From: Macrostomum lignano
Taxonomy: Eukaryota
Length of the DNA: 64,000 nt
Direction of reading: 5' to 3'
NCBI GenBank assembly: GCA_002269645.1
Contig: NIVC01001740.1
Span: 62,001 to 126,000 of the forward strand
Of the stretch, positions 1,421-52,368 are shown piece after piece (position 1 is the first letter of the stretch; every line of letters starts with the position of its first letter). The notes below the pieces were generated by a model, which saw only the letters and a list, made by a program, of their open reading frames with translations, was not told the origin of the DNA and did not search any database. Both the position numbers and the translations under genes were made by a program.

Positions 1421-1639
1421 TGTGGTGCAGGCAGCCACGCCAAAGGGCCTGACAGTCGACAAGATCCGGGCTGCAACCGAGTCGGACCCGACCCTGACGG
1501 CCGTCATGCAGGCGCTGGCAACTGGGAACTGGAGCTGTGGGGCGACAGCGCCAGCGCACAGCTTCCGGTCTCTGAAAGACGAACTCAGCGTCCACGCAGG
1601 CCTGCTGCTCCGAGGCAGTAGAATTGTCATCCCAGCAGA

Positions 1640-2739
1640 ACTGCAGCAGTTGACCATCAGCCTGGCGCATCAGGTCACCTGGACCAGAAAAAAACGTCCG
1701 ATCGACTTCAACGCAAGATCTGGTGGCCCGGCATGATCAAACAGGTGGAAGCCGTCGTCTCCCGCTGCCGCCCGTGCCAGGCGGCCCGGCCTGATGGGGC
1801 CACCAAGCAGCCGCCGATGCAGCCGACGCCTCTTCCGTCGGGGCCATGGCAATCGCTTAGCATGGATGTCTGCAAGCCATTCCCGACCGGCGAGAACATT
1901 GTCGTGCTGGTTGACTACTTCAGCCAATACCCGGATGTCTACGTGGTGCGAAGCCTCACCAGCTCCAGCGTCATCACCTGTGCCATGGCCTCGTTCAGCC
2001 GCTTTGGTGTGCCGCAGCAGATCACCACGGACAACGCCACGTACTTCACGAACGACGAGTTCAGAGAGTTTCTCGATGGCCTCGGAGTTCAGCATCGCCG
2101 CGTCACCCCGCTCTACCCGGCAGCGAATGGTGAAGTGGAGCGCTTCAACCGCAGCCTCAACAAGGCCGTCAACGCCGCCACAGCCGAAGGCAAAGACTGG
2201 CGCCGGGCCATCCACGAGTGGCTTCTCGGCTACCGCAACTCCGTGCACCTGGCACCGACCGCTCGCCCAACGACCTCTTGTTCAACAGGGCCGTCGGCGA
2301 CGTCTTGCCTGCCATCTCGACGAAGCAGCGCGGCAGCCGCGAGCGGCAACTCCAGAGCCACGACCGCAGCTACAAGCAAGCGATCCGGCAGACAGCCGAC
2401 ACGCGACGAGCGGCTGGGCCGCACGGCATTCAGGCGGGAGTCCGCGTGCTGCTCAAGAATCGCGGCAAAGCCAAGCTGAGGTGTCCGTTTGACCCGCACC
2501 CCTGGATCGTTAAAGCGGTAAACGGCAGCGCCCTGACTCTGGAACGTGACGGGGCCGTCTTGCGACGGCACGTGACCGAGACGAAGCTGCTGCACGAGTG
2601 CCCCTGGGAGCCCGAAGAACTGGATGCCGGCAAGCCAGCCGAGACTCCGCCCACCACGCTTGGAGGCGCGAACGAGGGAGCCATTGCGCAGAGGCCCCAT
2701 CCCAGGAAGGCTAAGTGGCAAATCTATTACAAACTATAA
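1640..2739 (+). pseudogene. Gypsy integrase (HHCC zinc finger plus DDE core), frameshifted
   Basis: AHQ/(G)HL...IWWPGM...CRPC zinc finger broken by a -1 shift near 1672. The core SMD...TTDNA...NGEVERFNRSL lies in ORF 1733-2479, with a second shift near 2250 into the C-terminal domain. Confidence 0.92.
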
Positions 2740-15800: not shown

Positions 15801-18800
15801 CTTGCTGTCTGGGGATGCTTGCTGTCTGGGGATGCTTGCTGTCTGGGGATGCTTGCTGTCTGGGGATGCTTGCTGTCTGGGGATGCTTGCTGTCTGGGGA
15901 TGCTTGCTGTCTTGGGGATGCTTGCTGTCTGGGGATGCTTGCTGTCTGGGGATGCTTGCTGTCTGGGGATGCTTGCTGTCTGGGGATGCTTGCTGTCTGG
16001 GGATGCTTGCTGTCTGGGGATGCTTGCTGTCTGGGGATGCTTGCTGTCTGGGGATGCTTGCTGTCTGGGGATGCTTGCTGTCTGGGGATGCTTGCTGTCT
16101 GGGGATGCTTGCTGTCTGGGGGATGCTTGCTGTCTGGGGATGCTTGCTGTCTGGGGATGCTTGCTGTCTTGGGGATGCTTGCTGTCTGGGGATGCTTGCT
16201 GTCTGGGGATGCTTGCTGTCTGGGGATGCTTGCTGTCTTGGGGATGCTTGCTGTCTTGGGGATGCTTGCTGTCTGGGGATGCTTGCTGTCTGGGGATGCT
16301 TGCTGTCTGGGGATGCTTGCTGTCTTGGGGATGCTTGCTGTCTTGGGGATGCTTGCTGTCTGGGGGATGCTTGCTGTCTGGGGATGCTTGCTGTCTGGGG
16401 ATGCTTGCTGTCTGGGGATGCTTGCTGTCTGGGGATGCTTGCTGTCTGGGGATGCTTGCTGTCTGGGGATGCTTGCTGTCTGGGGATGCTTGCTGTCTGG
16501 GGATGCTTGCTGTCTTGGGGATGCTTGCTGTCTGGGGATGCTTGCTGTCTGGGGATGCTTGCTGTCTGGGGATGCTTGCTGTCTGGGGATGCTTGCTGTC
16601 TGGGGATGCTTGCTGTCTGGGGATGCTTGCTGTCTGGGGATGCTTGCTGCTCTGTCTGGGGATGCTTGCTGTCTGGGGATGCTTGCTGTCTGGGGATGCT
16701 TGCTGTCTTGGGGATGCTTGCTGTCTGGGGATGCTTGCTGTCTGGGGATGCTTGCTGTCTGGGGATGCTTGCTGTCTGGGGATGCTTGCTGTCTGGGGAT
16801 GCTTGCTGTCTGGGGATGCTTGCTGTCTGGGGATGCTTGCTGTCTGGGGATGCTTGCTGTCTGGGGATGCTTGCTGTCTGGGGATGCTTGCTGTCTGGGG
16901 ATGCTTGCTGTCTGGGGATGCTTGCTGTCTGGGGATGCTTGCTGTCTGGGGATGCTTGCTGTCTGGGGATGCTTGCTGTCTGGGGATGCTTGCTGTCTGG
17001 GGATGCTTGCTGTCTGGGGATGCTTGCTGTCTGGGGATGCTTGCTGTCTGGGGATGCTTGCTGTCTGGGGATGCTTGCTGTCTGGGGATGCTTGCTGTCT
17101 TGGGGATGCTTGCTGTCTGGGGATGCTTGCTGTCTGGGGATGCTTGCTGTCTGGGGATGCTTGCTGTCTGGGGATGCTTGCTGTCTGGGGATGCTTGCTG
17201 TCTGGGGGATGCTTGCTGTCTGGGGATGCTTGCTGTCTGGGGATGCTTGCTGTCTGGGGGATGCTTGCTGTCTGGGGATGCTTGCTGTCTGGGGATGCTT
17301 GCTGTCTGGGGATGCTTGCTGTCTGGGGATGCTTGCTGTCTGGGGATGCTTGCTGTCTGGGGATGCTTGCTGTCTGGGGATGCTTGCTGTCTGGGGATGC
17401 TTGCTGTCTGGGGATGCTTGCTGTCTGGGGATGCTTGCTGTCTGGGGATGCTTGCTGTCTGGGGATGCTTGCTGTCTGGGGATGCTTGCTGTCTGGGGAT
17501 GCTTGCTGTCTGGGGATGCTTGCTGTCTGGGGATGCTTGCTGTCTGGGGATGCTTGCTGTCTGGGGATGCTTGCTGTCTGGGGATGCTTGCTGTCTGGGG
17601 ATGCTTGCTGTCTGGGGATGCTTGCTGTCTGGGGATGCTTGCTGTCTGGGGATGCTTGCTGTCTGGGGATGCTTGCTGTCTGGGGATGCTTGCTGTCTGG
17701 GGATGCTTGCTGTCTGGGGATGCTTGCTGTCTGGGGATGCTTGCTGTCTGGGGATGCTTGCTGTCTGGGGATGCTTGCTGTCTGGGGATGCTTGCTGTCT
17801 GGGGATGCTTGCTGTCTGGGGGATGCTTGCTGTCTGGGGATGCTTGCTGTCTGGGGGATGCTTGCTGTCTTGGGGATGCTTGCTGTCTGGGGATGCTTGC
17901 TGTCTGGGGATGCTTGCTGTCTGGGGATGCTTGCTGTCTTGGGGATGCTTGCTGTCTGGGGATGCTTGCTGTCTTGGGGATGCTTGCTGTCTGGGGATGC
18001 TTGCTGTCTTGGGGATGCTTGCTGTCTGGGGATGCTTGCTGTCTGGGGATGCTTGCTGTCTGGGGATGCTTGCTGTCTGGGGATGCTTGCTGTCTGGGGA
18101 TGCTTGCTGTCTGGGGATGCTTGCTGTCTGGGGATGCTTGCTGTCTGGGGGATGCTTGCTGTCTGGGGATGCTTGCTGTCTGGGGATGCTTGCTGTCTGG
18201 GGATGCTTGCTGTCTGGGGATGCTTGCTGTCTGGGGATGCTTGCTGTCTGGGGATGCTTGCTGTCTGGGGATGCTTGCTGTCTGGGGATGCTTGCTGTCT
18301 GGGGATGCTTGCTGTCTGGGGATGCTTGCTGTCTGGGGATGCTTGCTGTCTGGGGATGCTTGCTGTCTGGGGATGCTTGCTGTCTGGGGATGCTTGCTGT
18401 CTGGGGATGCTTGCTGTCTGGGGATGCTTGCTGTCTGGGGATGCTTGCTGTCTGGGGATGCTTGCTGTCTGGGGATGCTTGCTGTCTGGGGATGCTTGCT
18501 GTCTGGGGATGCTTGCTGTCTGGGGATGCTTGCTGTCTGGGGATGCTTGCTGTCTGGGGATGCTTGCTGTCTGGGGGATGCTTGCTGTCTGGGGATGCTT
18601 GCTGTCTGGGGGATGCTTGCTGTCTGGGGATGCTTGCTGTCTGGGGATGCTTGCTGTCTGGGGATGCTTGCTGTCTGGGGGATGCTTGCTGTCTGGGGAT
18701 GCTTGCTGTCTGGGGATGCTTGCTGTCTGGGGATGCTTGCTGTCTGGGGATGCTTGCTGTCTGGGGATGCTTGCTGTCTGGGGATGCTTGCTGTCTGGGG

Positions 18801-20450
18801 ATGCTTGCTGTCTGGGGATGCTTGCTGTCTGGGGATGCTTGCTGTCTGGGGATGCTTGCTGTCTGGGGATGCTTGCTGTCTGGGGATGCTTGCTGTCTGG
18901 GGATGCTTGCTGTCTGGGGATGCTTGCTGTCTGGGGATGCTTGCTGTCTGGGGATGCTTGCTGTCTGGGGATGCTTGCTGTCTGGGGATGCTTGCTGCTG
19001 CTTGCTGTCTGGGGATGCTTGCTGTCTGGGGATGCTTGCTGTCTGGGGATGCTTGCTGTCTGGGGATGCTTGCTGTCTGGGGATGCTTGCTGTCTGGGGA
19101 TGCTTGCTGTCTGGGGATGCTTGCTGTCTGGGGATGCTTGCTGTCTGGGGATGCTTGCTGTCTGGGGATGCTTGCTGTCTGGGGATGCTTGCTGTCTGGG
19201 GGATGCTTGCTATCTGGGGATGCTTGCTGTCTGGGGATGCTTGCTGTCTGGGGATGCTTGCTGTCTGGGGATGCTTGCTGTCTGGGGATGCTTGCTGTCT
19301 GGGGATGCTTGCTGTCTGGGGGATGCTTGCTGTCTGGGGATGCTTGCTGTCTGGGGATGCTTGCTGTCTGGGGATGCTTGCTGTCTGGGGATGCTTGCTG
19401 TCTGGGGATGCTTGCTGTCTGGGGATGCTTGCTGTCTGGGGATGCTTGCTGTCTGGGGATGCTTGCTGTCTGGGGATGCTTGCTGTCTGGGGGATGCTTG
19501 CTGTCTGGGGATGCTTGCTGTCTGGGGATGCTTGCTGTCTGGGGATGCTTGCTGTCTGGGGGATGCTTGCTGTGGGGATGCTTGCTGTCTGGGGATGCTT
19601 GCTGTCTGGGGATGCTTGCTGTCTGGGGATGCTTGCTGTCTGGGGATGCTTGCTGTCTGGGGATGCTTGCTGTCTGGGGATGCTTGCTGTCTGGGGGATG
19701 CTTGCTGCTGTCTGGGGGATGCTTGCTTGCTGTCTGGGGAATGCTTGCTATCTGGGGATGCTTGCTGTCTGGGGATGCTTGCTATCTGGGGATGCTTGCT
19801 GTCTGGGGGATGCTTGCTGTCTGGGGATGCTTGCTATGCTGCTTGCTGTCTGGGGATGCTTGCTATGGGCTGCTTGCTGTCTGGGGATGCTTGCTGTCTG
19901 GGGGATGCTTGCTGTCTGGGCGATGCTTGCTGTCTGGGCGATGCTTGCTGTCTGGGCGATTCTTGCTGTCTGGGGGATGCTTGCTTGCTGTCTGGGGGAT
20001 GCTTGCTTGCTGTCTGGGGGATGCTTGCTTGCTGTCTGGGGAATGCTTGCTATCTGGGGAATGCTTGCTATGGGCTGCTTGCTGTCTGGGGGATGCTTGC
20101 TATGGGCTGCTTGCTATCTGGGGGATGCTTGCTGTCTGGGGGATGCTTGCTGTCTGGGCGATGCTTGCTGTCTGGGCGATGCTTGCTGTCTGGGCGATGC
20201 TTGCTGTCTGGGGGATGCTTGCTGTCTGGGGGATGCTTGCTGTCTGGGGGATGCTTGCTGTCTGGGGGATGCTTGCTGTCTGGGGGATGCTTGCTGTCTG
20301 GGGGATGCTTGCTGTCTGGGGGATGCTTGCTGTCTGGGCGATGCTTGCTGTCTGGTGGATGCTTGCTGTCTGGGCGATGCTTGCTGTCTGTGGGATTCTT
20401 GCTGTCTGGGGGATTCTTGCTGTCTGGGGGATGCTTGCTGATGCTTGCTG
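3862..20450 (+). repeat. 16.6-kb satellite, 17-bp consensus GGGGATGCTTGCTGTCT with 18-bp variants (roughly 950 copies)
   Basis: Direct reading. Variants differ almost only at the T/G junction (TCT-GGGG, TCTT-GGGG, TCT-GGGGG, TCT-GTGGG). The unit has no stop codon, which explains the three ~5500-aa ORFs. Confidence 0.99.
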
Positions 20451-27466: not shown

Positions 27467-28270
27467 CTAAACCGTACGGAGGATTAATAACGCAGCAGAT
27501 TGGCTTTCTGATGATGATAATAACAATAAAGCTGCTTGTTGTTCTTCGCACGTCTCAGGGGGGGGGGAGATTTTAATCTTTTCCCAAAAAATAGACAGAA
27601 ACGCGAGGTGCCTATTGGAAAATCGCTCCAAGCAGAGGGGTGATGGCGAACTGTTTACATTCGCTACCATGCGAGCTTATCAGACTGTGCAGATCTGGTC
27701 GCTCCACATGGCTAGGTTGATTAAGAAGCACATTATCAGTGGCTAATATTGATTCGAGAAAAAGTAAGAAGTCTTGCAGTCTTCTTCATAGTTTTGCCTT
27801 AGCCACCGCCTCATCTCGCCCCTCCCCCTCCCCCTGTATCGACTCTAAATTGTAAATAAAATTCTATAAGCTTAATGATAAAGTCACAGAAGGCCTACGA
27901 GCGTAAGTCCCTAACTGGATCTCCTGGGTCAGTGGATATCGCGTCCAAGGTAATAAATGTTGATCTGCGGTCATTCGTTTCTGGCGTACGTCACTAAGTC
28001 CTTCCAATTTAGACGAGAAGCTACGAGTACATTTCTTGGAAATATTTGGGAAATTTTTAAACTAAAATTTTAGTTTTCTGAATTTAATTTATCAATCCCC
28101 CTATGTCCGTAATGTATTTTTCGGTAAAACCTGTCTCTTGAAATTTCCAAGAAACGTATAGTTTATCGTCCTTGTACTTGAGAGGTCCTTGATGAATGCA
28201 CGCCCGACTTTCGGTGTCTAATATAGGGTTTAAAAAAGAACCTCAGCGTCTTTCCTCATCGAACTCTCAC

Positions 28271-28480
28271 CCGAAAAGAGTCGTTCAGGAATCCGTAGAC
28301 GATTGGATTGACGAACGAGTTTGCCATGGCGGTCCAGTGGAATGCGACAAAAATCCTCTCCAGGGTGACGCTGTCCAGCCACGCCTGCACCTGGGTATAG
28401 TCCACTAGCACGTTGAATATGTGCAGCGGCAGCCAGCAGATGGCGAACAGTAGGACCACAATAATCAGCATTTTCACAAC
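28271..28480 (-). CDS. Class A GPCR, exon 2 (TM6-TM7: VVKMLIIVVLLFAICWLPLH...HWTAMANSFVNPIVYGFLNDSFR)
   Basis: CWLP and NPxxY motifs. Acceptor CTAAC..CCTGCCAG upstream and donor GTGAGA at 28270. Confidence 0.93.
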
Positions 28481-28954
28481 CTGGCAGGTGTTAGGTTTAG
28501 GGACAATTTAGTTACTATGGGCGTATGTCGTATATTTGTCATATTCATAAATGAAAATATACAATTTGCGGAGAGCGCATCTGTGACCATCATTTCGTTT
28601 CCTTTCCCAGAGAAAAGCAAAAGAAAAAAGGAAAAAGGAGACTGGGCCTTGGCTGCAGACAGCGATTTTAGAGGGTTTTCCAAAAGTAACGAAAAGTTTT
28701 ATCGTGACTTTTTTAATGGGTAACAGCTGTCTACCTGTCTACTCGTTACCTATAGCTACTCTGTCGGCTCTCTGGTTTTTTTGGTTTATGAGCCTTGAAG
28801 TCTTTTAAGTGAGTCTACCAGTATTTGCAAAATTGTTGGCTTTAAAATGTTGTCTAAAGTCTGCCCCATCCAGGAGTTATCACACCATCCACTCTCATTC
28901 TCATTGCTTATGAAACATCTTTCGTATATTATGTTTACTAGTGTTGGGCACAAT

Positions 28955-32125: not shown

Positions 32126-34206
32126 CTTCCCACACGATCGGATCGGAGCAAATCGGTGCGTACAGTTCATGAATGTCTCAAAACCGCGTGGCTGGAATCA
32201 ATAGTCTTAAAGTTCACAGAAAACTATGGTGCTAAAGTGGACTTCAATTTTTTCTACTGGAACTGTGAGTGAGCCTCTTAATAGGGATTTTACAGTTCTT
32301 TAAGTGGCACTTTTGGTCCTGAAGCAGCCATGCATTGTTCCTAGAAGCTTATCTACTTAATTCCTGGTGAAGATTCACTAGTCCACATGTAGTGCAGATC
32401 TCCGCCTCTATTTCTGAGGCTCATGCTTAGCTGAGACCAGTCTTGTGCACTTTAAGAAAAAAATTCAGGAAACAGCTCTATTTGAGCGATCTGTAGAGCA
32501 CATAGCGGAGTTTTTCAAAAACTTTTTTCTGCAATACCCTAGTATAATGCCGCATTGCATTGCTTCCGGTCTATTTCAAACAGAGTACCTATGCACTTTG
32601 TCTCCAGTCTATTGCAAAATCAACCAGCACCAAAGCTAAGTGCGCATCGATCTATAGCTAATGTTTGGCACAAGCGGCAGATGACTGCAGCGCCAAAGTC
32701 AGTAGTGCTTATCATAAAGAATTATTCGATTCCCTGAAGCACTTTTACACTACACTGTTGATGTAGCAGGCGTCTATTTTGACGTCGTTGAATTGACAAC
32801 CACGATTGATGAAATCCACGCCGCCGGCCGAATCCGGGGCGCCGGCGTCAACCAGTAGGCAGTCGACGAAACGCCGATTTATCCATTTAAACGATGTATC
32901 CATTTAAAATCCGAGTTATGGTTTTAGCTTTTTTCACGTCTTTTCGATTCCTATCTCGATTCCTAGTTTCAAAGTTTCAAAGTGGCCTAACTTGTTATTC
33001 GGTGTTCAACTTTCAACAATTCGGAATATGTGCAGTTAGGCAAAAAATGAAAAACACGAGTGTACAAGTACGAAGGAAATCTCCAAGTCAAACCGGTACG
33101 AGCCTTGTCCCAAACTAACCGTGCACAGATGCTCCCACATTGAGTTCACCCAAACTTGTAGAGTTGATTCAATGCAAATCGAGAAATTTACAGGAAAACT
33201 AAACAGGGCCTCCACTCACTCCCGAATTCGTCACAGAATCCCGGAGACTTTCCGAACATACTAAGGCGCACTTAAGCACTCTATCCACATCTACTAAAGT
33301 TTTGCCTAACTGCTGCTGGCTAGTTTGCCACATGCTTCAGCCAATCAACCTACTCTAGCGTCCCTCCCACCTCAAATAACTTTCGCGTTCTCTAATTCTT
33401 GGGCCTCCTTGAGTAAGCAATGGAGAGGAAAAGCATTTTAGGTAAGCGCTACTAAACTCGTTTACCTATACTCGTGCTTGAGCAATGCTTGATGGTCAAC
33501 ATGTACAATTATGCGCGCCTCTGAACTCACCAATTAAGCTAATGACATCGAAGTCGCATTGTACGTGTGCGAAATTTATTAAGAATTGTAAGGCCTCTTT
33601 TAACTCTGAATATGGGAATCAAAATTGACCATAAGCTGGGGGGCTTTCGTATTTGACAAGCTACAAGTGCAATATTAACCGCATGAACCCGTATAGAGGC
33701 CAAGTTTCAAACGAGCCTATTGTTAATAAGTGCGAAGTTTGTATTCATTAGATGCTGATGATCGACAATGAACTATAATACTTTACTTTATTACCGCAAT
33801 AAAACAGCAAGTTCGTAGCAATTTTCTGCGCAACATTGAGGAAGTCTTGAGGAAGTTAAGAATGCACTTTCGCAGAACTCCGGAGAGTCTGAGCCCAGCA
33901 ACTACAGTGTAATCCCGGAGGCACTTACAAGATTGCTGGTCTGGATCGATGAGCTTAGAGAGCTGTTCGAGTTTACGAAAAAAAAATTACACAAGCTCTT
34001 CCCGAGTCCTGGGGTGTTAAAATTCCAGAAGAACTGCATGGAGATCTGAATGCGATCAGGATCAGGTAGATGGGTCAAGAAACGGAAAGCAGGTAACAAG
34101 TGCTACGGGTGTCTCCAACTGATGAACTGATGAAGCGCGATGCTTCAGAGACCAAGAACTACTAGAACTATAGAAGAAAGGTTGAACGCCTTTTCCAATA
34201 TGAGCA

Positions 34207-34991
34207 CAAGGACTACTCAAGTAAGAAGTAACATATATATAGGACGCTACACTGGAAATCTGTGGTAAATGTTTTGAAGGAAACTTTTTGCATTTTGTGG
34301 TAATGTAGCTCGCTTTAAAATTGGCAAAAGAGCAAACGTCAAAACAAACATTTAATCTATTTAAACTGCCGACGCGTTCGCTCAATATTTTTCGATTTAA
34401 TTTAAATACGAGTATATTCTCGTTTGTGTTTTCGATGGTTCGTTTGCCCTGAAGATGTCCGCTTTGGACGAAACGCGTCGGCAGTTTAAATAGATTAAAT
34501 GTTTGTTTTGACGTTTGCTCTTTTGCTAATTTTCGCATTTTGTCATTAATTTAAACGTTTTTTCAAGTGACAGAACAATTTAACATGAAAAATCGATTAA
34601 TGCGTCGTTAGAGCAGCATGTGAGGCACAAAATAGTGTGATTAGGACTTTCTCTGACACTGTTTAGAGACCCAATCACTGTTTTAGTGTTGAAAATCGTG
34701 AAATTTCCTATCTCCGTATTGTATTCTTCCGGTGAAACCTGCCTTTAAAACTATTTTTGAACAAAAAGCTTTATGAATATCGATAGAGCAATACGCTCGT
34801 AAGAAAGGCACAACATATCAAAAGATGAACACTGGATCTGCCTCCTATCAAAAGCAATAACAATTTTTGTGCTGAAAAAATGAAAACCTCCTATCTCTGT
34901 AGTGTATTTTTAAGCGAAAATTTGCCTTCAAAACATTTACCACAGATTTCGAGTGTTGCGTCCTGTATATGTGTTACTTGAGTAGTCCTTG
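34207..34991. mobile_element. ~785-bp element bounded by ~70-bp imperfect inverted repeats (CAAGGACTACTC...GAGTAGTCCTTG), containing a nested ~55-60-bp inverted repeat and a hammerhead ribozyme
   Basis: 34207-34280 is the reverse complement of 34925-34991. 34317-34378 is the reverse complement of 34472-34533. 34551-34991 recurs at 46672-47105. Confidence 0.8.
34444..34484 (+). ncRNA. Minimal type I hammerhead ribozyme (Penelope-associated type)
   Basis: Stem I TTGCC/GGCAG; core CTGAAGA (34449-55) plus one extra T; stem II GTCC-GCTTT-GGAC; GAA; palindromic stem III ACGCGT; cleavage triplet GTC with the cut after 34479. Confidence 0.8.
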
Positions 34992-36272
34992 GTTCAATTT
35001 TGATCAAAGTCCAGTTCTAAAAAAACTAGCGAAAATTGAATTCAGACAATTCAGACTGCATGCACCCACTTTCAAAGGACAAAAAAGTCTAAATTACATC
35101 GGTACACCGTAGTGACGCTAACAGATTATTGCTGCGCTAGACCGTACCAAACCAAAATCAGATATGGTAGTTCCTCTTTTGACCTATATAAAAACTTGTT
35201 ATCTCTACGTCTAGTTTAATGCAATGCATTGGCTTCTTCGTTGGTTGTTTTTATAATCTAGCGGCCATAAAACATTGTGACTAGCTAGCGCAAAAAAGGT
35301 CAATCAACAAAGTACTAAAGATTTTTTTGTGAAAACTATACAAACAAATATCAAGCAGTTTTGCTTAGCATCTGTGGCAGTCTGACCCATATATCCGTCG
35401 GGAAATGCTCGACCACCGCTTTCGAAGAGCTTGAAGGGCTGGAAGATCAGCCCAAGCAGACTGAGAGACTAACAGACATCAAATTTATGGCGGCTCAAGT
35501 TGTTCTCTGACAGCGAGAGTCAGTCAGGCTGCACGCAATTGTCAAGAGGAATAGCAAGATGCTTCCCATTGAGCCTACAGTCATGCCATTCCAGTTCCAG
35601 CAACTGGGGCAACCTGTAAGCGCTTCACATTCAAAGACCTTTGTCTAAAACGGTCTTGCCCTGCTCAGCGTTCGAAACAGACCGAGCAGGCTAGGCAATT
35701 GAAAGCAAAGAGAGAAACTGATTGAATTCGAGGTCGTCCTATCCTAACCCTTAACCAGCCCCTCTGCACAAGCCTGTGCATTTTTTAACAACAAACAAAT
35801 ACACTGAGGAAAGTTAATCTACTGATATCACAGCAGTGCGAGCTAATGTCTTGATGTTACTACGAGCGTAAAGTAGCAGGTAGCAGGAATGAGCAATTAT
35901 ACCTGAGAAAGTATACATGTACATGAGTACACTTTGAGATATGAGTATACTTGAGAAAGTATGTGCTGGCTGAAGGAGCCACGAAGGCTATGCAGCTTTT
36001 TAGCTTCGCATGACTGCAGGCCAGAGAAGGGGAAGAGAGGAGAGGTGAGGAAAAAAGATTGGAGACGAGACGAGAGAAGGGATGAAATAGGAGAAGACAG
36101 AAGGGAAGTGGAAAGGGAGAGGTGAGAAGTGCGTGAAAGGAGACACAAACCTTGAGTAGGCCGGATTGCTATTGTGAAGTTTCAAAGGACCCAAGGGCTG
36201 GATAAAGAGGCTTTGCGCATCGAATGTGGCCCACGAGCCGGATCGTTTGTTGACCCCTGCCCTATGCCGATA

Positions 36273-36509: not shown

Positions 36510-37269
36510 GTCACGGATCGCTACACACAAGACCCTGTGAACTCTACCAACCTGGATCCAACGATCAGGTAGATCGAGAGGGCTGTTAGATCGCTTAGAA
36601 GGTCACCTGAGGTGAGCAGACAATTGACTCCTAGAACGAATGACTGGTACAGTAACTAGAGAGCCTGCTGTAACTTCCGAGGCCACCAGAGTCTAAAAAT
36701 CATCAACCCATTATTCGACACAGTCGACCAAACTGAGACGCCACTACCGAAGGCTGTCAATACTGATCTTAGAGAGACTTCTGAGAGATGGAGGGCGCCC
36801 AGCTGATGACTTCCAAGCCAGCCACTTGACCTACCGCTGTTGCTCTATAGATTTTTTGGGAAGGGATGCACTGACGGTCAGTGCTGTCAAACTTTTGAAC
36901 AGTATAAACAAATTTAGTTCAGTGCAGCCCTACTGTATTCACCTTTTTCTTATCCATCGGGCTAAGAACTTTTAGGCCTTACTTTGCGATGCTTGTCAGT
37001 TTTGCGTCATGAACTGAAAATAGCTTGACTTCCCGTCGTGACATTCTTTATTTTTCTATTTTCCATGCGTCAGGGCCAATTGCCAGCAATTGCGTACTCG
37101 TACTGCAGACAACTGAAGTAGGACGCTACACTCGGTTTTCTTAGAAATGAGCTGAAGACCAGTAAGGAAAGGATATTTGCTGTATCTCATTTAGGATGCT
37201 CAACAGAAAGCATACGAGCGCAGCGCCGAATCGAATCATCGAAAATTGATAAAACTAACAAAAACTTGC

Positions 37270-38064
37270 CTTTCGCTTGGCCCTGACGTGCTGCTGATCC
37301 CTGGCCGAGTCTGCATTGCCTGGCAGCGTTCTGGTCCACAGTTTTCTCCCGATGGCAGCGTAGGTGGCGCAGAGAACGGACACGGGCAGCAGGTAGGTGA
37401 GCACCAGGACAAACACTGAGTAGGCCCTCTGGATGCCGGGGCTGTGCCAATGCTCGCGACACATTTCCACCACCACAACTGACGCTGTCTCATTGTCCGA
37501 GGCAGCTGCCGCGCCGTTGTGAGGGTCATCGGGTCCGCCGCCTCCGGTGGCGTACTTTCCACTGACGCGCAGCTGCACCGAGGACAACAGCAGCGACGCC
37601 GTCCACAGAGCGACAATCACTGCTCGAGACCGATTGAAGGTCAGCCGCTGGCTCAGAGGAAACGTCACCACCCAGAAACGATCGAAGCCAATAGCCATGT
37701 TGGTCAGCACAGAAGACGTCACGGCCACCAGCTGGCAGTAAGACACCAGCTTGCACAGAATGTCAGGCAGAGGCCAGCGGCGGTAGAGCACGTTCACGAG
37801 AGTGAAGGGCAGACAGAAGCAGCCGATTAGAAGGTCAGCAACGGCCAGGCTGAGCAGAAAGCCGCGCAGATCTGTCCGGCACTGGCGGCCGCGCGTCACA
37901 ACCACAATGACTGTCAAGTTGCCGACGGTGCTGAGCAGCACTGCGGCTGAGTAGCCGGCGATGAGCAGAGCCTCCTCCGGTGCTGAACGGGTGGGGGCTG
38001 AATAAACCTCCGAATTTGCTCCAGCAGACGTTGCAGTCGCCAGTGAAGGCGCAGGGCTGCTCAT
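37270..38064 (-). CDS. Class A neuropeptide-type GPCR, exon 1 (N-terminus to ICL3); full protein ~447 aa; tachykinin/RYamide-luqin/GPR83-like neighbourhood
   Basis: TM1 GNLTV, TM2 LAVADL, WPLPDILCKL, TM3 AIGFDRF, TM5 YLLP, ending HVRAKRK. It splices to VVKML through an AAG|GCAAGT donor. Subfamily assignment is tentative. Confidence 0.92.
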
Positions 38065-43019: not shown

Positions 43020-44762
43020 TCAAGCGTCAACGGAGAACACTTGCAGAGGTTTCATCTCGTCTTCATCAACTTGAGCATTGGCGCCGGAAGCATTGGTTGC
43101 AAGTTCAGTTCTCCGGGCGCCGCAGGGACAGCCCACAGGCTCCATCTCAGCCACGGTGTTGGGCATCGGCCTGTCCTTGCTCTCGGGCAGGAGCAGGATG
43201 GTCAGGCTGGCCAGGACGCAGATCACGCCGTACAACAGAGACGGCAAGTTGTCGTAGAGACTCGCCAGAGCACCGCCGATCTCCGGTGCCAGCAGTTGAG
43301 CGCCCCGCATCAAAATGGAGGCAACGAAGAATGAGCAGCTGCGGACTTTAGTCGGCAAAACTTCGGATCCGTAGACGGCCAGGATACTGAAGGCAACGGT
43401 GACGCTGAACTTGATGGCGATTGCCAGCACGCTGCTGCCTTGGAACACAATGTTCGGGTTGGTTGGAATGAAAGGCATGATGATAAGTCCAACTCCACTG
43501 AATGCCATATTAGCCATGCTGGTGTACTTGCGGCCAGCCCTGTTGGTGAGCTGCCAGGCCAGGATGTAGGCCGGAATCTCCAGTAGGCCAGAGATCAGCA
43601 CGTTCAGGTAGATATCTTTTGTGATGAAGTCTCTCTTGAACGACAGAGCGAAGTAGACCAGGGACACGGTGAAAAAGTTGAACGATAGTACACCGACAGT
43701 GACAAAGTACTCCAGCCGGCATAGGTTCTCCCTGGGAAAAATTTTGAAAATACAGTTCTCCTCTGGGGGCTTGTTTTCATCCGGAGGCTCAACCAGCTCG
43801 TTGTGCTCAAAGTTAAACTCGTTGAGCACCTCCTTGCAACCGGAAAACTTGCAGATTTCTTTTAATATTTTCTTGGCTCTTTTTGTGTAGCCGCGCGTGA
43901 GCAGCCATCTCGGAGACTCCGGAATGACCGGAATAAATGTGGCGTAGCCGACTCCAGCAATGGCGCAGGCCACCGCTGTCTGCACTCTCCAGTTGTGAAT
44001 GAAGTAGCTGATGGCCGCCGAACCGCTGTATCCTAAGCAGAACAGAATCCACATTAGATTTCCGTGGATGCCTCTGTAGTCCTCCGCCACAAGCTCCGTT
44101 ATGAGAATGGTGCTGATGATGACCGCTGGAACACCGAACCCCATGATGAAGCGCAGCACCATCTGCAGCGTCAGGTCTTGGACGAATATCACGGCAATGT
44201 TGCAGGAAATGTCCAGATAGGCAAAGCCGACCAACACCGTCTTTCTGCCGATAATGTCGCCCAGGGGACCAAACACGGTGGACAGACAGATTCCGAACTG
44301 CAGCATCGTCTGGATTCGATCCATCAAGTACTGTCGCTCGCACACCATGGAGTACTCCATGAACATGGTCCAGCGGGTTGGCGGGTCAGGCAAGAACGTC
44401 CACGCGCTGCAGGCCTCGGCCGGGACGCTGGTCCGATTAACCGTCGATGCGTTTCCTTCGGACGATGATTCGAGTCGCAGCGATCCGTCCGAGTCTCGAA
44501 ACAACCGAGGACGACTGCAGGTGAAGCTGTTGATGGTGAAGTTGTCAGGCATGCTCGCATTGTGAGCGATGCTGGACCATGGCACCGTCTGGTTGTCAAG
44601 CGTGACCTCAGCGCAGTGGAAGGGCACACTGGCCGTGACCAGGTTCAGTATGAACATGTCGAATGCGGCTTTCATGTAAATGATGGCGATAAGATTGGTG
44701 ATGACCCATCGGTAGCAGGGTCCGGACTTTGAAATTTTGGTGAGTAGTTCTTCGTACTGCAT
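43020..44762 (-). CDS. SLC22-family (organic ion transporter, MFS) paralog A, intronless, ~580 aa
   Basis: Large Cys-containing extracellular loop after TM1; motifs GDIIGRK, ELVAEDYRG, PESPRWL, GRKYT, EVLPTKVR, LLPESK. The ATG is chosen by alignment to paralogs B and C (MxYEELL). Confidence 0.95.
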   Translation of the reverse strand: MQYEELLTKISKSGPCYRWVITNLIAIIYMKAAFDMFILNLVTASVPFHCAEVTLDNQTVPWSSIAHNASMPDNFTINSFTCSRPRLFRDSDGSLRLESSSEGNASTVNRTSVPAEACSAWTFLPDPPTRWTMFMEYSMVCERQYLMDRIQTMLQFGICLSTVFGPLGDIIGRKTVLVGFAYLDISCNIAVIFVQDLTLQMVLRFIMGFGVPAVIISTILITELVAEDYRGIHGNLMWILFCLGYSGSAAISYFIHNWRVQTAVACAIAGVGYATFIPVIPESPRWLLTRGYTKRAKKILKEICKFSGCKEVLNEFNFEHNELVEPPDENKPPEENCIFKIFPRENLCRLEYFVTVGVLSFNFFTVSLVYFALSFKRDFITKDIYLNVLISGLLEIPAYILAWQLTNRAGRKYTSMANMAFSGVGLIIMPFIPTNPNIVFQGSSVLAIAIKFSVTVAFSILAVYGSEVLPTKVRSCSFFVASILMRGAQLLAPEIGGALASLYDNLPSLLYGVICVLASLTILLLPESKDRPMPNTVAEMEPVGCPCGARRTELATNASGANAQVDEDEMKPLQVFSVDA

Positions 44763-45458
44763 CTTCTCTAGTGCGGTTGAAAGCATTGAGAAATGGACAG
44801 CCTATGGCATATATAGAGAAGCCCAACAAGCCTCAATTGTCCTTTTGAGTTACCGTCCTTTTTTCAAGCAGAGACTGTCAACTTTTCTATTTTGCTCAAG
44901 TTTGATCTCCAGCTCCTAATTGTGCAAGAATGTGCAATGAGCGATGAGCCACAGAATCTCAGCGCTGCTTTTGAGCTTAGCTAGAAATGCTTTTTATTTG
45001 CTATTCATGTTGAAATGGGCTAGCTATATACTTTCTGACCACTTTTTGGCATTTTTTGGTTGGCGATTGCCTGTTAGCTTAGCTTCATAGCTTCATGGCT
45101 TGCAAGGTGCAACGCAACGCAAAGGTACGCTTGCCTTGTACTGTACGAATGTTTTCTAGTGCATAATTATACTCATCTTCGGGCGGGTCTGGCTACAAGG
45201 CTGGCACCTATAGCCACATAATTTAGTCCGTATAACCGCTTTGAAACTTAATCATGAGTTACAGCTGTGTAATGCGATTTATTATCAAAACAGTTGCCTT
45301 CTCCGGGATTTTACTTGGATTTTACCTCGTAATTTTTTTTACCATAAATTTACCATAAAGTCGTTTGGCTTCCAGATCATTTCTACGAAAATCGAGTTGA
45401 AGCTAGCATTCTTCTGCTGTAGTTTCCCGTGTCTTTTTGGCGGTTGCTTGATATTCAA

Positions 45459-46194: not shown

Positions 46195-46671
46195 GGTGAA
46201 ATCAGTTATTTATTTATTATTTTATAAAAAACAGTAGCTATGAGTAGTTAGTAACCCATGTACAATACTTTGCTGAGATTTCTTGGAACAGCATCCAGCT
46301 GTTGAAGAAATTGAAGGAGGCGACCTGAGTGGATCTGACGTGCGGCGAAGAGATTTTTTGTGAAGCACCGATGCGCTGTCAAATCCAGATCCGGGAAAAA
46401 GCCGATCCGTTCAACTGCCTGCTTCTGACGTTTTGTTTCTGACTAAAAATCAAGACAAGACAGCAAGAGTGTTGTACTTTTCGAATGGCTCACTTCTGAG
46501 CTGAGCTAGTTGCTATGGCTTTTAGTTTCAAACCAGTTTGAGAAGTGTTCATTAGGTCATATATTTTATAAACATTTCCAGGGCTTTTCATTCTGCAGTG
46601 GCTTGCTAGCTCCACTGACTGTGGGCAAGGGCAGTTTAGTGGTAAACGCGTCAGTTTTGGCTCTTATTATA

Positions 46672-47105
46672 TTAAACGTTTTTTCAAGTGACAGAACAAT
46701 TTAACATGAAAAATCGATTAATGCGTCGTTAGAGCAGCATGTGAGGCACAAAATAGTGTGATTAGGACTTTCTCTGACACTGTTTAGAGACCCAATCACT
46801 GTTTTAGTGTTGAAAATCGTGAAGTTTCCTATCTCCGTATTGTATTCTTCCGGTGAAACCTGCCTTTAAAACTATTTTTGAACAAAAAGCTTTATGAATA
46901 TCGATAGAGCAATAAGAAAGGCACAACATATCAAAAGATGAACACTGGATCTGCCTCCTATCAAAAGCAATAACAATTTTTGTGCTGAAAAAATGAAAAC
47001 CTCCTATCTCTGTAGTGTATTTTTAGGCGAAAATTTGCCTTCAAAACATTTACCACAGATTTCGAGTGTAGCGTCCTATATATATGTTACTGGAGTAGTC
47101 CTTGG
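46672..47105 (+). repeat. Second, 5'-truncated copy of the 34551-34991 segment (near-identical)
   Basis: Same sequence from TTAAACGTTTTTTCAAGTGAC to GAGTAGTCCTTGG, with a few substitutions and one short indel (ACGCTCGT missing). Confidence 0.95.
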
Positions 47106-50226: not shown

Positions 50227-50640
50227 CTCTGTCTTACTCTGTCTCCCCTGGCCAAGCAGTGAAGGCGGGCCAAACGGCTTTGTTTCAGTTTTCCTGATCG
50301 CCTCTTGGCGCGATTTATTCGCACCGCCAGCCGCGCTTCTGGCCTCTCCACTTTCTGAGGTGTTGGGGATCGTCCCACGGCCCCCCTCGCGTGATTATGC
50401 AGCTGTTGCTGCGAGCCAATCAAGCGCCTCCACCGACCCCCCCCCCCTGCAGCGAGCAAACAGAGAAGCGGCACAAGCGTGTGTGGCTCGTGGGGCTTCC
50501 TATAGAGAAGTGCAATAAAGTGAAGTGGCGAGCGAAAGAAGTTAAGAGCGGCAAAAAGAAATCTTGACAACGGCTTGCCAGTGAGCTTCTCTGCTATTGT
50601 AAGTTTCTATTTGGAAAGAACCGAGCGACAGAGCAGAGCT

Positions 50641-52368
50641 ATGCTTTACGAAGATCTGCTGACTCACATATCCAAGTCAGGCCCGGCCTACCGATGGATC
50701 ATTACCGTGCTCATCGCCTTCCTATCCATGAAGTCCGCATTCGACATGTTCGTGTTGAACCTGGCCACCGCCAGCGTGCCCTACCACTGCGCCGAAGCGC
50801 TGGTGGACGGCGCCGTGCAGCCCTGGTCGGAGGTGCTCGCCAACAACACCTTCGCTACCAATTTTAGCATCAACGATTTCACCTGTCAGCGGCCGAAGTT
50901 CGTGCGCGGCTTGGACGGCTCGCTGCACATGGCCATGGCCTCGGCGGCTGGCGGCAATGGGTCGACCGCGACGCCCAAGGAGGAGGTCTGCGGCGCCTGG
51001 ACGTTTAGGCCGGACCCGCCCGAGCGGTGGACAATGTTCATGGAGTACGAGATGGTGTGCGACCGCAAGTACCTGATGGACCGCATGCAGACCGTCATGC
51101 AGTTCGGCATCTGCCTGTCGACAATATTCGGTCCTCTGGGCGACATTCTCGGTCGGAAGCCGCTGCTCGTGGCCTTCTGCTACCTGGATCTCACCTGCAA
51201 CATAGCCGTGATCTTCGTCCGCAATCTCACCCTGCAGATGGTGCTCAGATTCTGCATGGGTTTCGGCGCGCCCGCCGTGCTCATTGGGATCATACTCATC
51301 ACGGAGCTGGTGGCGGAGGACTATCGCGGTATCCATGGCAACCTAGTCTGGACTCTGTGGGTGTTCGCTTACAGCGGCTCAGCAGCAATCAGCTACTTTA
51401 TCTACAACTGGCGCATTCAAATGGTGGTGGTCGTGCTCATCATCGGAGCGGGGTACGCCACCTACATCCCGGTGCTGCCGGAGTCACCGCGTTGGCTGCT
51501 CACTCGTGGTAAAACCAAGCGAGCTAAGAAGATTCTGAAAGAGGTCAGCAAGTACTCGGGCTGCAAAGAGGTGCTCAATGAGTTCAACTTCGAGCACAAC
51601 GAGCTGGTTGATCCACCGGAGCACACGAACGAGCGGGAGGAGCAGAGCTGCATCTTTAAGTTCATACCGCGAGAGAACCTGTGCCGCCTGGATTACCTTG
51701 TCACCGTGGGCGTTGTGACCTTCAACTTCTTCACCGTGTCGCTTGTCTACTTCGCCCTGTCGTTCAAGCGCGATTTTATCACCAATAATCCGTACCTGAA
51801 CGTGCTGATCTCTGGCCTGCTTGAGCTGCCGGCCTACATCCTGGCCTGGCAGCTCACGAACAGGGCCGGCCGCAAGTACACCTGTCTCGGCACCATGGCT
51901 TTCTGCGGTGTCGGCCTCATAATTCTGCCTTATGTGCCCACCGACCCGGAAGTGGTGTTTCAGGGCAGCAGCGTCCTGGCTATCGCCATCAAGTTCAGCG
52001 TCACCGTAGCCTTCAGCGTCCTGGCTGTCTACGGCTCCGAGGTGCTGCCAACCAAAGTTCGCAGCTGCTCATTCTTCTTCGCCTGCTTTCTGATGCGCTC
52101 GGCTCAAATCCTTGCCCCGGAGCTGGGCGGAGCTCTGGCTCAATGGTACATCCACCTGCCCTACCTGCTCTATGGTGTGATCTCGGTTCTGGCCAGCCTA
52201 GCTATCCTGCTGCTGCCCGAGACCAAGGACAAGCCCATGCCCAACACCGTGGCCGAGATGGAACAGGTGGGCTGTCCCTGCTGCGTGTCGGGCAGCGATG
52301 AGGCGGAGCGGCAGGGAGCATCGGCTGGGGAGGCCGGCGGCGAAGAGATGAAGCCGCTAAGAGTGTGA
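50641..52368 (+). CDS. SLC22-family transporter paralog B, intronless, ~575 aa
   Basis: Same motif set as paralog A, with high similarity throughout; start MLYEDLL at 50641. Confidence 0.95.
   Translation: MLYEDLLTHISKSGPAYRWIITVLIAFLSMKSAFDMFVLNLATASVPYHCAEALVDGAVQPWSEVLANNTFATNFSINDFTCQRPKFVRGLDGSLHMAMASAAGGNGSTATPKEEVCGAWTFRPDPPERWTMFMEYEMVCDRKYLMDRMQTVMQFGICLSTIFGPLGDILGRKPLLVAFCYLDLTCNIAVIFVRNLTLQMVLRFCMGFGAPAVLIGIILITELVAEDYRGIHGNLVWTLWVFAYSGSAAISYFIYNWRIQMVVVVLIIGAGYATYIPVLPESPRWLLTRGKTKRAKKILKEVSKYSGCKEVLNEFNFEHNELVDPPEHTNEREEQSCIFKFIPRENLCRLDYLVTVGVVTFNFFTVSLVYFALSFKRDFITNNPYLNVLISGLLELPAYILAWQLTNRAGRKYTCLGTMAFCGVGLIILPYVPTDPEVVFQGSSVLAIAIKFSVTVAFSVLAVYGSEVLPTKVRSCSFFFACFLMRSAQILAPELGGALAQWYIHLPYLLYGVISVLASLAILLLPETKDKPMPNTVAEMEQVGCPCCVSGSDEAERQGASAGEAGGEEMKPLRV

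What the first reader, a model, noticed from the sequence alone, without database searches (positions are those of the whole stretch)
34444..34484. Intact-looking minimal hammerhead ribozyme with a palindromic stem III in a GPCR intron
Seen: TTGCC-CTGAAGA-T-GTCC(GCTTT)GGAC-GAA-ACGCGT-C-GGCAG. All core nucleotides are present; stem I is 5 bp (one G-U), stem II is 4 bp, stem III is the palindrome ACGCGT, the predicted cut is after GTC at 34479, and there is one extra U after A9. Established: Penelope-like elements and metazoan retrozymes carry minimal type I hammerheads with palindromic stem III that cleave as dimers, and variants with a core insertion are known. Inference: a potentially active self-cleaving RNA. 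It is on the strand antisense to the GPCR, so it would process a + strand transcript rather than the receptor pre-mRNA.
Basis: partly seen in the sequence, partly recalled or inferred. Interest (0 to 1): 0.8.

Follow-up and report, generated by a model that had tools for sequence, protein, structure and literature searches.

The report
Penelope-type hammerhead in a dead retroelement insertion
The motif is a genuine minimal hammerhead ribozyme of the kind carried by Penelope-like retrotransposons, but here it sits in a 231-bp truncated, inverted-repeat insertion in a flatworm (Macrostomum lignano) GPCR intron, so it is an ordinary transposon relic and not a host ribozyme.

Summary
The sequence is exactly as described: a complete type I minimal hammerhead (HHR) at 34444-34484 (+), cutting after C34479. 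It is the only descriptor or covariance-model hit in the window. Shuffles give 0.01 chance hits per window, and none of 500 shuffles shows its three extra Penelope-specific traits together.

It has every published hallmark of Penelope-like-element (PLE) min-HHRs: an extra base between A9 and G10.1, G10.1-C11.1, a palindromic helix III and a 5-bp helix I. The same variant occurs in metagenome contigs with compensated stem I, directly upstream of PLE genes.

The organism is Macrostomum lignano. A 94-97% identical locus in a public assembly lacks 34299-34529. The HHR therefore lies in a 231-bp insertion with a 14-bp target duplication. The insertion comprises a forward fragment, an inverted 5'-truncated copy and an 18-nt one-sided tail, which is the PLE insertion signature.

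The insertion is antisense in a roughly 8.7-kb rhodopsin-type GPCR intron. No PLE coding sequence or second HHR is nearby, and a 62-bp hairpin buries the cleavage site. Activity at this locus is therefore unlikely.

Verdict: real, a new member of a known kind, low interest.

The parts
34444..34484 (+). Minimal type I hammerhead ribozyme. Stem I 34444-34448 / 34480-34484; CUGAAGA 34449-34455; extra U 34456; stem II 34457-34460 / 34466-34469; loop 34461-34465; GAA 34470-34472; helix III palindrome 34473-34478; C17 at 34479.
   Evidence: Stem I covaries with unrelated copies of the same variant.
34479..34480 (+). Predicted self-cleavage site (after GUC).
   Evidence: Position of C17 in the motif. 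Cleavage itself was not tested.
34473..34478 (+). Palindrome ACGCGU. It gives a 1-bp helix III in the monomer and a 6-bp intermolecular helix III in a dimer.
   Evidence: the homodimer MFE (-26.9 kcal/mol against 2 x -9.9) is the double-hammerhead fold. The monomer with helix III scores only -3.3.
34299..34529 (.). 231-bp insertion unit that carries the hammerhead. Its right boundary is ambiguous by up to 4 T.
   Evidence: Absent from the 94-97% identical homologous locus L006 (M. lignano GCA_002269645.1), where the flanks abut.
34285..34298 (.). Left copy of the 14-bp target-site duplication, TTTTTGCATTTTGT. It carries a C>T change at a CpG (34289).
   Evidence: (D6), 41, 56: the empty site has a single copy, CTTTTCGCATTTTGT.
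34530..34543 (.). Right copy of the target-site duplication, TTTTCGCATTTTGT.
34299..34316 (-). 18-nt extension present at one end only (the 'tail'). It continues the inverted copy beyond the point where the forward copy ends.
   Evidence: the arms are identical up to ...GCYAATTTT; the left copy then continues AAAGCGAGCTACATTACC before the target sequence.
34317..34378 (-). Inverted 5'-truncated copy of the element's 3' end. It begins inside helix III (AACGCGTCGGCAG...).
   Evidence: I1: 62 nt, 98% complementary, 93 nt apart.
34379..34529 (+). Forward 5'-truncated copy: 65 nt upstream sequence, the hammerhead, then 50 nt down to the element's 3' end.
34207..34298 (.). Left part of an older, unrelated repeat into which the insertion landed (context only).
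   Evidence: (I2, I4).
34544..34991 (.). Right part of the older host repeat (context only). A second copy lies at 46666-47105.
   Evidence: (96% identity).
37258..38064 (-). GPCR exon 1, TM1-TM5 (context).
   Evidence: 7tm_1 E=4e-37, profile positions 1-196.
28259..28507 (-). GPCR exon 2, TM6-TM7 (context).
   Evidence: 7tm_1 E=5e-13, profile positions 200-260.

Best explanation
The motif is the hammerhead ribozyme of a Penelope-like retroelement (PLE) of Macrostomum lignano. It is preserved in a small, non-coding, dead-on-arrival insertion.

In the parent element (inferred from the literature), the ribozyme lies in the pseudo-LTR just upstream of the ORFs and tens of nucleotides upstream of the site where the PLE reverse transcriptase starts copying. 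Transcripts of tandem units bring two copies together. The ACGCGU palindromes pair into a 6-bp helix III, forming a double hammerhead that cuts after GUC. This is probably slow and protein-assisted.

The insertion in this window was made by PLE-type target-primed reverse transcription on both strands of a staggered break in an AT-rich target. Two cDNAs started at the element's 3' end. One started 18 nt further out, which produced the one-sided tail. Both were truncated early (151 and 62 nt) and joined head to head, leaving a 14-bp target duplication.

Shown here: the motif; the covariation of stem I; the insertion boundaries, target duplication, inverted copy and tail; the empty homologous site; and the association of this ribozyme variant with RT/GIY-YIG genes in other contigs.

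Inferred: the both-strand priming history, the dimer mechanism, and that this copy is inactive. The inactivity argument rests on the copy being single, locked in a 62-bp hairpin, antisense in a GPCR intron and not conserved.
For: Motif: complete and unique in the window, and far above chance.

PLE traits: all four descriptor-independent traits listed by Cervera and de la Pena 2014 (PMC4209133) are present. [quoted passage not shown]

Pattern search: CTGANGANGTCCN{3,7}GGACGAAACGCGTC gives 5 metagenome loci and 0 in 596 Gb of prokaryote genomes and in IMG/VR. Their stem I sequences differ but still pair: 83% of cells are paired against 22-44% when slid, and every stem I pair has changes on both sides.

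Link to PLE genes: in L002/L004 and L003 the ribozyme lies 50-90 nt upstream of ORF1, which in L002/L004 is followed by an RT. That RT belongs to a family of more than 1500 proteins carrying RVT_1, HTH_animal and GIY-YIG hits. Four further contigs of that family (L007-L010) carry min-HHRs of the same architecture on the coding strand, upstream of ORF1 or between tandem units.

Insertion anatomy. It matches published PLE insertion features. These are heavy 5' truncation, an adjacent inverted 5'-truncated copy and a one-sided tail (PMC8557442). They also include extension of both target strands, AT-rich targets, RT start sites about 85-92 nt downstream of the HHR cut, and a tail lying between two RT start sites (PMC11167929). 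Here the 3' end lies 50 nt after the cut, or 72 nt with the tail.

Fold: the dimer is predicted as a double hammerhead, and the monomer's helix III is unstable.
Against: No PLE coding remnant (RT or GIY-YIG) is present in the window or in L006. No full-length M. lignano parent with the same 3' end could be retrieved, so derivation from a PLE rests on the ribozyme type and the insertion architecture.

Rfam hammerhead models do not score the motif at all.

The tail is 18 nt, shorter than the published 30-40 nt.

Only this one copy of this particular element was seen. The empty site in L006 could in principle be a precise secondary deletion between the 14-bp repeats.

Cleavage was not assayed.
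Confidence: 0.8

Rival explanations
1. It is a copy of a short non-autonomous, hammerhead-bearing element (SINE-like or retrozyme-like, derived from a PLE pseudo-LTR) that PLE machinery mobilises in trans, and not a 5'-truncated autonomous PLE.
For: No coding sequence is present. [quoted passage not shown] Schistosome SINE-like elements carry hammerheads (PMC6765202).
Against: There is only one hammerhead and no tandem units. The insertion ends do not coincide with the ribozyme cut site, as a linearised retrozyme monomer would predict. The forward copy is only 151 nt and ends where the inverted copy begins, which looks like truncation and not a defined 5' end.
Confidence: 0.13
2. The 231-bp unit is a foldback or MITE-type DNA transposon, and the hammerhead-like motif in it is a coincidence.
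For: It has 62-bp near-perfect inverted arms and a flanking direct repeat. Rfam hairpin (MIR) models score it on both strands. No hammerhead family is reported by Rfam.
Against: The arms are not terminal: 18 nt lie outside the left arm only. A 14-bp target duplication is atypical for DNA transposons (general knowledge). The motif carries three extra PLE-specific traits that occurred together in 0 of 124 chance sites. The identical ribozyme variant is found next to PLE genes with compensatory stem I changes.
Confidence: 0.04
3. It is a host-exapted ribozyme that processes an antisense transcript or regulates the GPCR gene, like the conserved intronic hammerheads of amniotes.
For: It is intronic with an intact catalytic core.
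Against: It is antisense to the gene. It is absent from the 94-97% identical homologous locus. It lacks the loop-loop tertiary contacts of fast hammerheads, has no dimer partner, and is sequestered by a 62-bp hairpin.
Confidence: 0.02

Closest known systems
Minimal hammerheads (min-HHR) of metazoan Penelope-like elements (Cervera and de la Pena 2014, PMC4209133; dimer cleavage, Lunse et al. 2017 as cited in PMC6765202)
   Same: Type I topology, a 4-5 bp helix I without defined loop 1, an extra nucleotide between A9 and G10.1, G10.1-C11.1, and a 1-bp helix III with a palindromic loop that implies dimer activity. Most genomic copies are single motifs in truncated elements, sometimes paired on opposite strands 100-700 bp apart.
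   Different: Stem II is 4-5 bp here, whereas the schistosome families have 7-8 bp. The extra base is U, whereas it is A in all nine related copies I retrieved. No flanking PLE ORF. Not previously described for Macrostomum in the searchable literature.
PLE insertion architecture (Craig et al. 2021, PMC8557442; Poseidon PAc in vitro, PMC11167929)
   Same: Heavy 5' truncation, an adjacent inverted 5'-truncated copy forming flanking inverted repeats, an extension at one end only, an AT-rich target, the hammerhead tens of nt from the 3' end, and both target strands used as primers.
   Different: The unit is extremely short (231 bp in total). The tail is 18 nt, not 30-40. There is no partial tandem or pLTR.
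Metazoan non-LTR retrozymes (de la Pena et al. 2020, PMC7229834; Li et al. 2026 preprint)
   Same: A type I hammerhead with a weak palindromic helix III, and probable origin from PLE pLTRs.
   Different: Retrozymes are tandem 170-400-nt units, each with a hammerhead, that give circular RNAs. Here there is a single hammerhead, no tandem, and ends that do not map to the cut site.
[quoted passage not shown]
   Same: An intronic location in a protein-coding gene.
   Different: Those are in the sense orientation, ultraconserved, and have stable helices and tertiary contacts. This one is antisense, polymorphic and minimal.

Membership tests
Hammerhead ribozyme, type I | Conserved core C3 U4 G5 A6 N7 G8 A9 / G12 A13 A14 / A15.1-U16.1 / H17 | tested here: met
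   every position is present and C17 is at 34479.
Hammerhead ribozyme, type I | Three helices around the core, with the open ends in helix I | tested here: met
   helices I (5 bp) and II (4-5 bp) are predicted. Helix III is only A-U plus a palindrome and is formed in the predicted dimer.
Hammerhead ribozyme, type I | Helices supported by compensatory changes in relatives | tested here: met
   all 7 stem I pairs change on both sides across 5 loci. Stems II and III were fixed by the search pattern, so that set says nothing about them. Stem II varies and stays paired in L007-L010, but those hits were selected by a pairing descriptor.
Hammerhead ribozyme, type I | Mg2+-dependent self-cleavage after H17 | not testable with these tools
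   Needs in vitro transcription of monomer and dimer constructs.
Rfam hammerhead families (Hammerhead_1 and relatives in release 15) | Score at or above the family gathering threshold | tested here: not met
   no hammerhead family is listed, even at E<=10. From my own knowledge, these models are built on canonical hammerheads with loop-loop contacts, which min-HHRs lack.
PLE min-HHR (Cervera and de la Pena 2014) | [quoted passage not shown] | tested here: met
   U34456; feature quoted.
PLE min-HHR (Cervera and de la Pena 2014) | G10.1-C11.1 closing pair of helix II | tested here: met
   G34457-C34469.
PLE min-HHR (Cervera and de la Pena 2014) | Palindromic 15.2-16.2 / loop 3 | tested here: met
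   A-CGCG-U at 34473-34478. Only 3 of 124 chance sites are palindromic.
PLE min-HHR (Cervera and de la Pena 2014) | Located in the pseudo-LTR of an element encoding RT plus GIY-YIG endonuclease | tested here: inconclusive
   No RT or EN remnant in the window or L006, because the insertion is too truncated to hold one. The same ribozyme variant does lie upstream of PLE ORFs in L002-L004.
PLE insertion | 5'-truncated copy with an adjacent inverted 5'-truncated copy, both 3' ends facing outward | tested here: met
PLE insertion | Extension ('tail') at one end only | tested here: met
   18 nt at 34299-34316; shorter than the 30-40 nt published.
PLE insertion | Discrete insertion with a target-site duplication in AT-rich DNA | tested here: met
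   14-bp duplication, and an empty site in L006.
Metazoan non-LTR retrozyme | Tandem repeats of 170-400 nt, each with a hammerhead | tested here: not met
   One hammerhead only and no tandem unit.
Conserved host intronic hammerhead (HH9/HH10 type) | Sense orientation and conservation at the orthologous or homologous locus | tested here: not met
   Antisense; absent from L006.

The most novel reading that the evidence does not exclude
The 231-bp unit may be a clean in vivo footprint of both-strand target-primed reverse transcription by a PLE. It shows two cDNAs primed from a 14-bp staggered break, starting at two template sites 18 nt apart and 50 and 72 nt downstream of the hammerhead cut. That would corroborate in a flatworm what has so far been shown in vitro for one lizard element.

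A further possibility is that such twin-primed insertions routinely turn the ribozyme region into long perfect hairpins, which feed small-RNA silencing of PLEs or perturb host introns.
Probability: 0.35. Interest if true: 0.4.

Novelty: new member of a known kind. Interest (0 to 1): 0.2.

Why it matters
The finding adds Macrostomum lignano, a regeneration model flatworm, to the animals known to carry Penelope-type hammerheads. The presence/absence difference between two near-identical loci shows that the element family moved after those loci diverged.

The insertion is small enough to read the whole event: target duplication, two start points and an inverted join. That could help PLE specialists check the both-strand priming model in vivo.

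For genome annotation, it is a reminder that Rfam hammerhead models miss min-HHRs, and that the resulting hairpins can be mistaken for miRNA precursors.

It does not point to a new ribozyme class or a host regulatory ribozyme.

Tried and rejected
- **Rfam.** The gathering scan of the window gave nothing. The E-value scan of 33400-35500 gave only sub-threshold plant MIR hairpin families on both strands. I rejected these as an artefact of the 62-bp inverted repeat.
- **First model of the element.** I initially took it to run from the hammerhead to 34991, with the outer inverted repeat (34207-34291 / 34914-34991) as part of it. I rejected this once L006 showed that the inner 231 bp is a separate insertion into an older repeat.
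- **AAACGCGTC at 46646-46654.** This sits upstream of the second copy of the outer repeat and looked like a hammerhead remnant. I rejected it because it aligns to the outer repeat's own left part and has no core.
- **The 158-aa ORF on the minus strand across the motif (34062-34538).** It has no Pfam hit and no homologue among 5.8 billion proteins, so it is spurious. This also failed as a route to other copies of the element.
- **Exact-protein look-up of the neighbouring transporter.** Not on record. The organism was identified by homology instead.
- **PLE coding remnants.** tblastn with six PLE RT/EN proteins against the window and L006 gave no hits.
- **Search for an M. lignano parent PLE.** The best 120 homologues of the L004 RT are unnamed metagenome or SRA proteins, with no Macrostomum entry listed.
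- **Element-specific and variant-specific patterns.** Nothing in prokaryote genomes or IMG/VR.
- **Covariance model R1.** No second hammerhead in the window or L006.
- **Pfam scan of the L004 RT.** Empty even at E<=10. RT identity rests on weak PDB hits to RTs only and on precomputed domain hits in its protein family.
- **Literature.** Lunse et al. 2017 is not held in the library.

Full report
**Observation.** Every hammerhead core position is present. Helix I is 5 bp with one U-G, and helix II is 4 bp (5 with a G-U). Helix III is the palindrome ACGCGU, one U is inserted after A9, and the cut would fall after C34479.

A hammerhead descriptor I wrote finds this and nothing else on either strand of the 64 kb, even with helix I relaxed to 3 bp. 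Dinucleotide shuffles give 0.01 hits per window with a 5-bp helix I. With a looser descriptor, 500 shuffles gave 124 chance sites. Of these, 61 had the extra base, 13 had G10.1-C11.1 and 3 had a palindromic helix III; none had all three. My rough product estimate is 3e-5 to 3e-4 per window.

Rfam lists no hammerhead family at the gathering score or at E<=10. As a monomer, the canonical fold without helix III scores -8.3 kcal/mol against an MFE of -9.9. With the 1-bp helix III it scores only -3.3. The 41-mer folds no better than its shuffles, z = -0.43.

**Where it is.** The neighbouring intronless transporter ORF is 98% identical to a Macrostomum lignano protein, so the window is from this free-living flatworm. 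A rhodopsin-type GPCR lies on the minus strand. Exon 1 at 37258-38064 matches Pfam 7tm_1 positions 1-196, and exon 2 at 28259-28507 matches positions 200-260 and carries CWLP and NPIVY.

**Immediate surroundings.** The 3' half of the ribozyme (from A15.1 onward) is the start of a 62-nt arm, 34472-34533. This arm is 98% complementary to 34317-34378, with 93 nt between them. The inverted repeat explains sub-threshold Rfam hits to plant miRNA hairpin families on both strands.

A second, outer inverted repeat (34207-34291 / 34914-34991) and a 96% identical copy of 34545-34992 at 46666-47105 first suggested one large element. The homologous locus showed otherwise.

**The homologous locus settles the anatomy.** L006, from M. 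lignano assembly GCA_002269645.1, is collinear and 94-97% identical to the window. It lacks window 34299-34529.
- L006 reads ...GGCAACTTTTCGCATTTTGTAATTAAT....
- The window has TTTTTGCATTTTGT (34285-34298), then 231 bp, then TTTTCGCATTTTGT (34530-34543).

The hammerhead therefore sits in a discrete 231-bp insertion with a 14-bp target-site duplication, inside an older unrelated repeat. The single difference between the duplicates is a C>T change at a CpG.

The insert has three parts:
- an 18-nt stretch at the left end only (34299-34316);
- an inverted copy (34317-34378);
- a forward copy (34379-34529) that holds the hammerhead 50 nt from its 3' end.

Both copies share the same outward-facing terminus...GCTCTTTTGCYAATTTT. 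The left copy simply continues 18 nt further, AAAGCGAGCTACATTACC.

**What kind of hammerhead.** Cervera and de la Pena (PMC4209133) list four features of metazoan PLE min-HHRs that were not in their search descriptor:
- G10.1-C11.1;
- palindromic 15.2-16.2/loop 3;
- large families with compensatory changes.

They also describe a short helix I of 4-5 bp. The first three features and the short helix I are met here. They also report that most genomic motifs are single copies in truncated elements, and that some occur as pairs on opposite strands 100-700 bp apart.

**Relatives elsewhere.** The pattern CTGANGANGTCCN{3,7}GGACGAAACGCGTC has 24 fixed bases. It hits five metagenome loci. It hits nothing in 596 Gb of prokaryotic genomes or in IMG/VR.

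The flanks of those hits are unrelated to the window, yet helix I pairs in each with different sequences: GCAGU/ACUGC, CCU/AGG, CC..CCCAG/CUGGG..GG and UUGCC/GGCAG. On the alignment, 83% of cells pair against 22-44% when the partner is slid. All seven helix I pairs change on both sides. Helices II and III were fixed by the pattern, so they say nothing in that set.

In L002/L004 (a single 7158-bp circularly permuted unit) and in L003, the ribozyme lies 50-90 nt upstream of ORF1, which in L002/L004 is followed by a 632-aa RT-like ORF. Pfam was silent on that ORF. Its only PDB matches are weak hits to reverse transcriptases. Its more than 1500 homologues carry precomputed RVT_1, HTH_animal and GIY-YIG hits and a CxxC linker before the GIY-YIG motif. 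That is a canonical endonuclease-positive PLE.

Four further contigs of that family hold six min-HHR sites (four distinct sequences) on the coding strand, upstream of ORF1 or between tandem units. All have an extra A after A9, G10.1-C11.1, and palindromic helix III sequences AGCU or ACGU. Their helix II sequences differ but stay paired. About 0.06 chance hits would be expected in that much sequence.

**How the insertion arose (inferred).** Craig et al. (PMC8557442) describe PLE insertions as heavily 5'-truncated. They often have an inverted 5'-truncated copy directly adjacent and a tail at one end only.

The in vitro study of the lizard element PAc (PMC11167929) reports several matching properties:
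- the PLE protein cleaves and extends both target strands;
- it prefers AT-rich sites;
- it starts reverse transcription internally, 85-92 nt downstream of the hammerhead cut;
- the tail is the sequence between two alternative start sites.

The window's unit fits point by point. The target is AT-rich, and the stagger left a 14-bp duplication. Two outward-facing copies share the same 3' end, one 18 nt longer. The hammerhead lies 50 nt (72 nt with the tail) from that end.

**How the ribozyme would work, and why probably not here.** ViennaRNA predicts the homodimer MFE (-26.9 kcal/mol against 2 x -9.9 for monomers) to be the double hammerhead. In that fold, helices II are intramolecular, ACGCGU pairs with ACGCGU as a 6-bp helix III, and helix I forms between molecules.

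The literature reports no cleavage by single min-HHRs, weak cleavage by dimers, and protein assistance for PAc.

At this locus there is no second hammerhead. A + strand transcript of the insert is predicted to form the 62-bp hairpin (-111 kcal/mol). That hairpin pairs helix III, C17 and the 3' strand of helix I with the left arm. The GPCR pre-mRNA contains only the complement of the ribozyme.

The unit is absent from the homologous locus, so no conserved host role is indicated.

**Limits.**
- I found no PLE coding remnant in the window or L006.
- I could not search the rest of the M. lignano genome, so the parent element and other copies remain unseen. A non-autonomous PLE-derived element cannot be separated from a truncated autonomous one.
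- The empty site could be a precise deletion between the 14-bp repeats, though insertion is the simpler reading.
- No paper in the library links Macrostomum with hammerhead ribozymes.

**Verdict.** This is a real hammerhead of a well-described kind in a dead transposon fragment. It is a new member of a known kind and of low general interest. It has modest value as a readable footprint of PLE integration.

Noticed in passing
window 3862-20440: A 16.6-kb minisatellite: the 17-nt unit CTGTCTGGGGATGCTTG repeated about 959 times at 97% match, with strong GC and AT skew. More than a dozen other micro- and minisatellite arrays fill the window.
   Followed up: partly
window 1003-2479 (+): A fragment of an LTR-retrotransposon pol gene (RT_RNaseH and rve integrase domains), unrelated to the hammerhead element.
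   Followed up: partly
window 43020-44786 (-), 50575-52368 (+), 58470-60332 (+): Three intronless SLC22/organic-cation-transporter-like MFS paralogues in a cluster. The first is 98% identical to an M. lignano protein, which identified the organism.
   Followed up: partly
window 34207-34298 + 34544-34991; second copy 46666-47105: The older repeat that hosts the insertion has an 85-nt inverted copy of its own 3' end at its 5' side. This is the same head-to-head layout as the hammerhead unit, but without a hammerhead. The second copy is forward-only. It may be another retroelement integrated by a similar route.
   Followed up: partly
window 34317-34533, both strands: The 62-bp near-perfect hairpin scores below threshold against plant MIR6140, MIR7502, MIR8562 and MIR1435 in Rfam. 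This is a structure-only artefact, but such a hairpin in the GPCR pre-mRNA could be a Dicer or ADAR substrate.
   Followed up: no
L002 and L004 (whole contigs): Two metagenome contigs are one 7158-bp circularly permuted unit with overlapping ends. It holds a hammerhead, a 611-aa ORF1, a 632-aa PLE RT without GIY-YIG, and about 2.5 kb of TA/CA-rich low-complexity sequence. It could be a collapsed tandem array or a circular form.
   Followed up: partly
L007 613-648 and 5891-5926; L008 127-162; L009 3653-3688; L010 445-480 and 6391-6426: PLE contigs with tandem ORF1 + RT-GIY-YIG units carry min-HHRs upstream of ORF1 or between units. Their helix III palindromes are AGCU or ACGU, the cleavage-site base H17 is U or C, and there is always an extra A after A9.
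   Followed up: partly
window 34289: The left target-duplication copy differs from the right copy and from the empty site by C>T at a CpG. Together with the one mismatch in the 62-nt arms, this is all the change seen since insertion.
   Followed up: no
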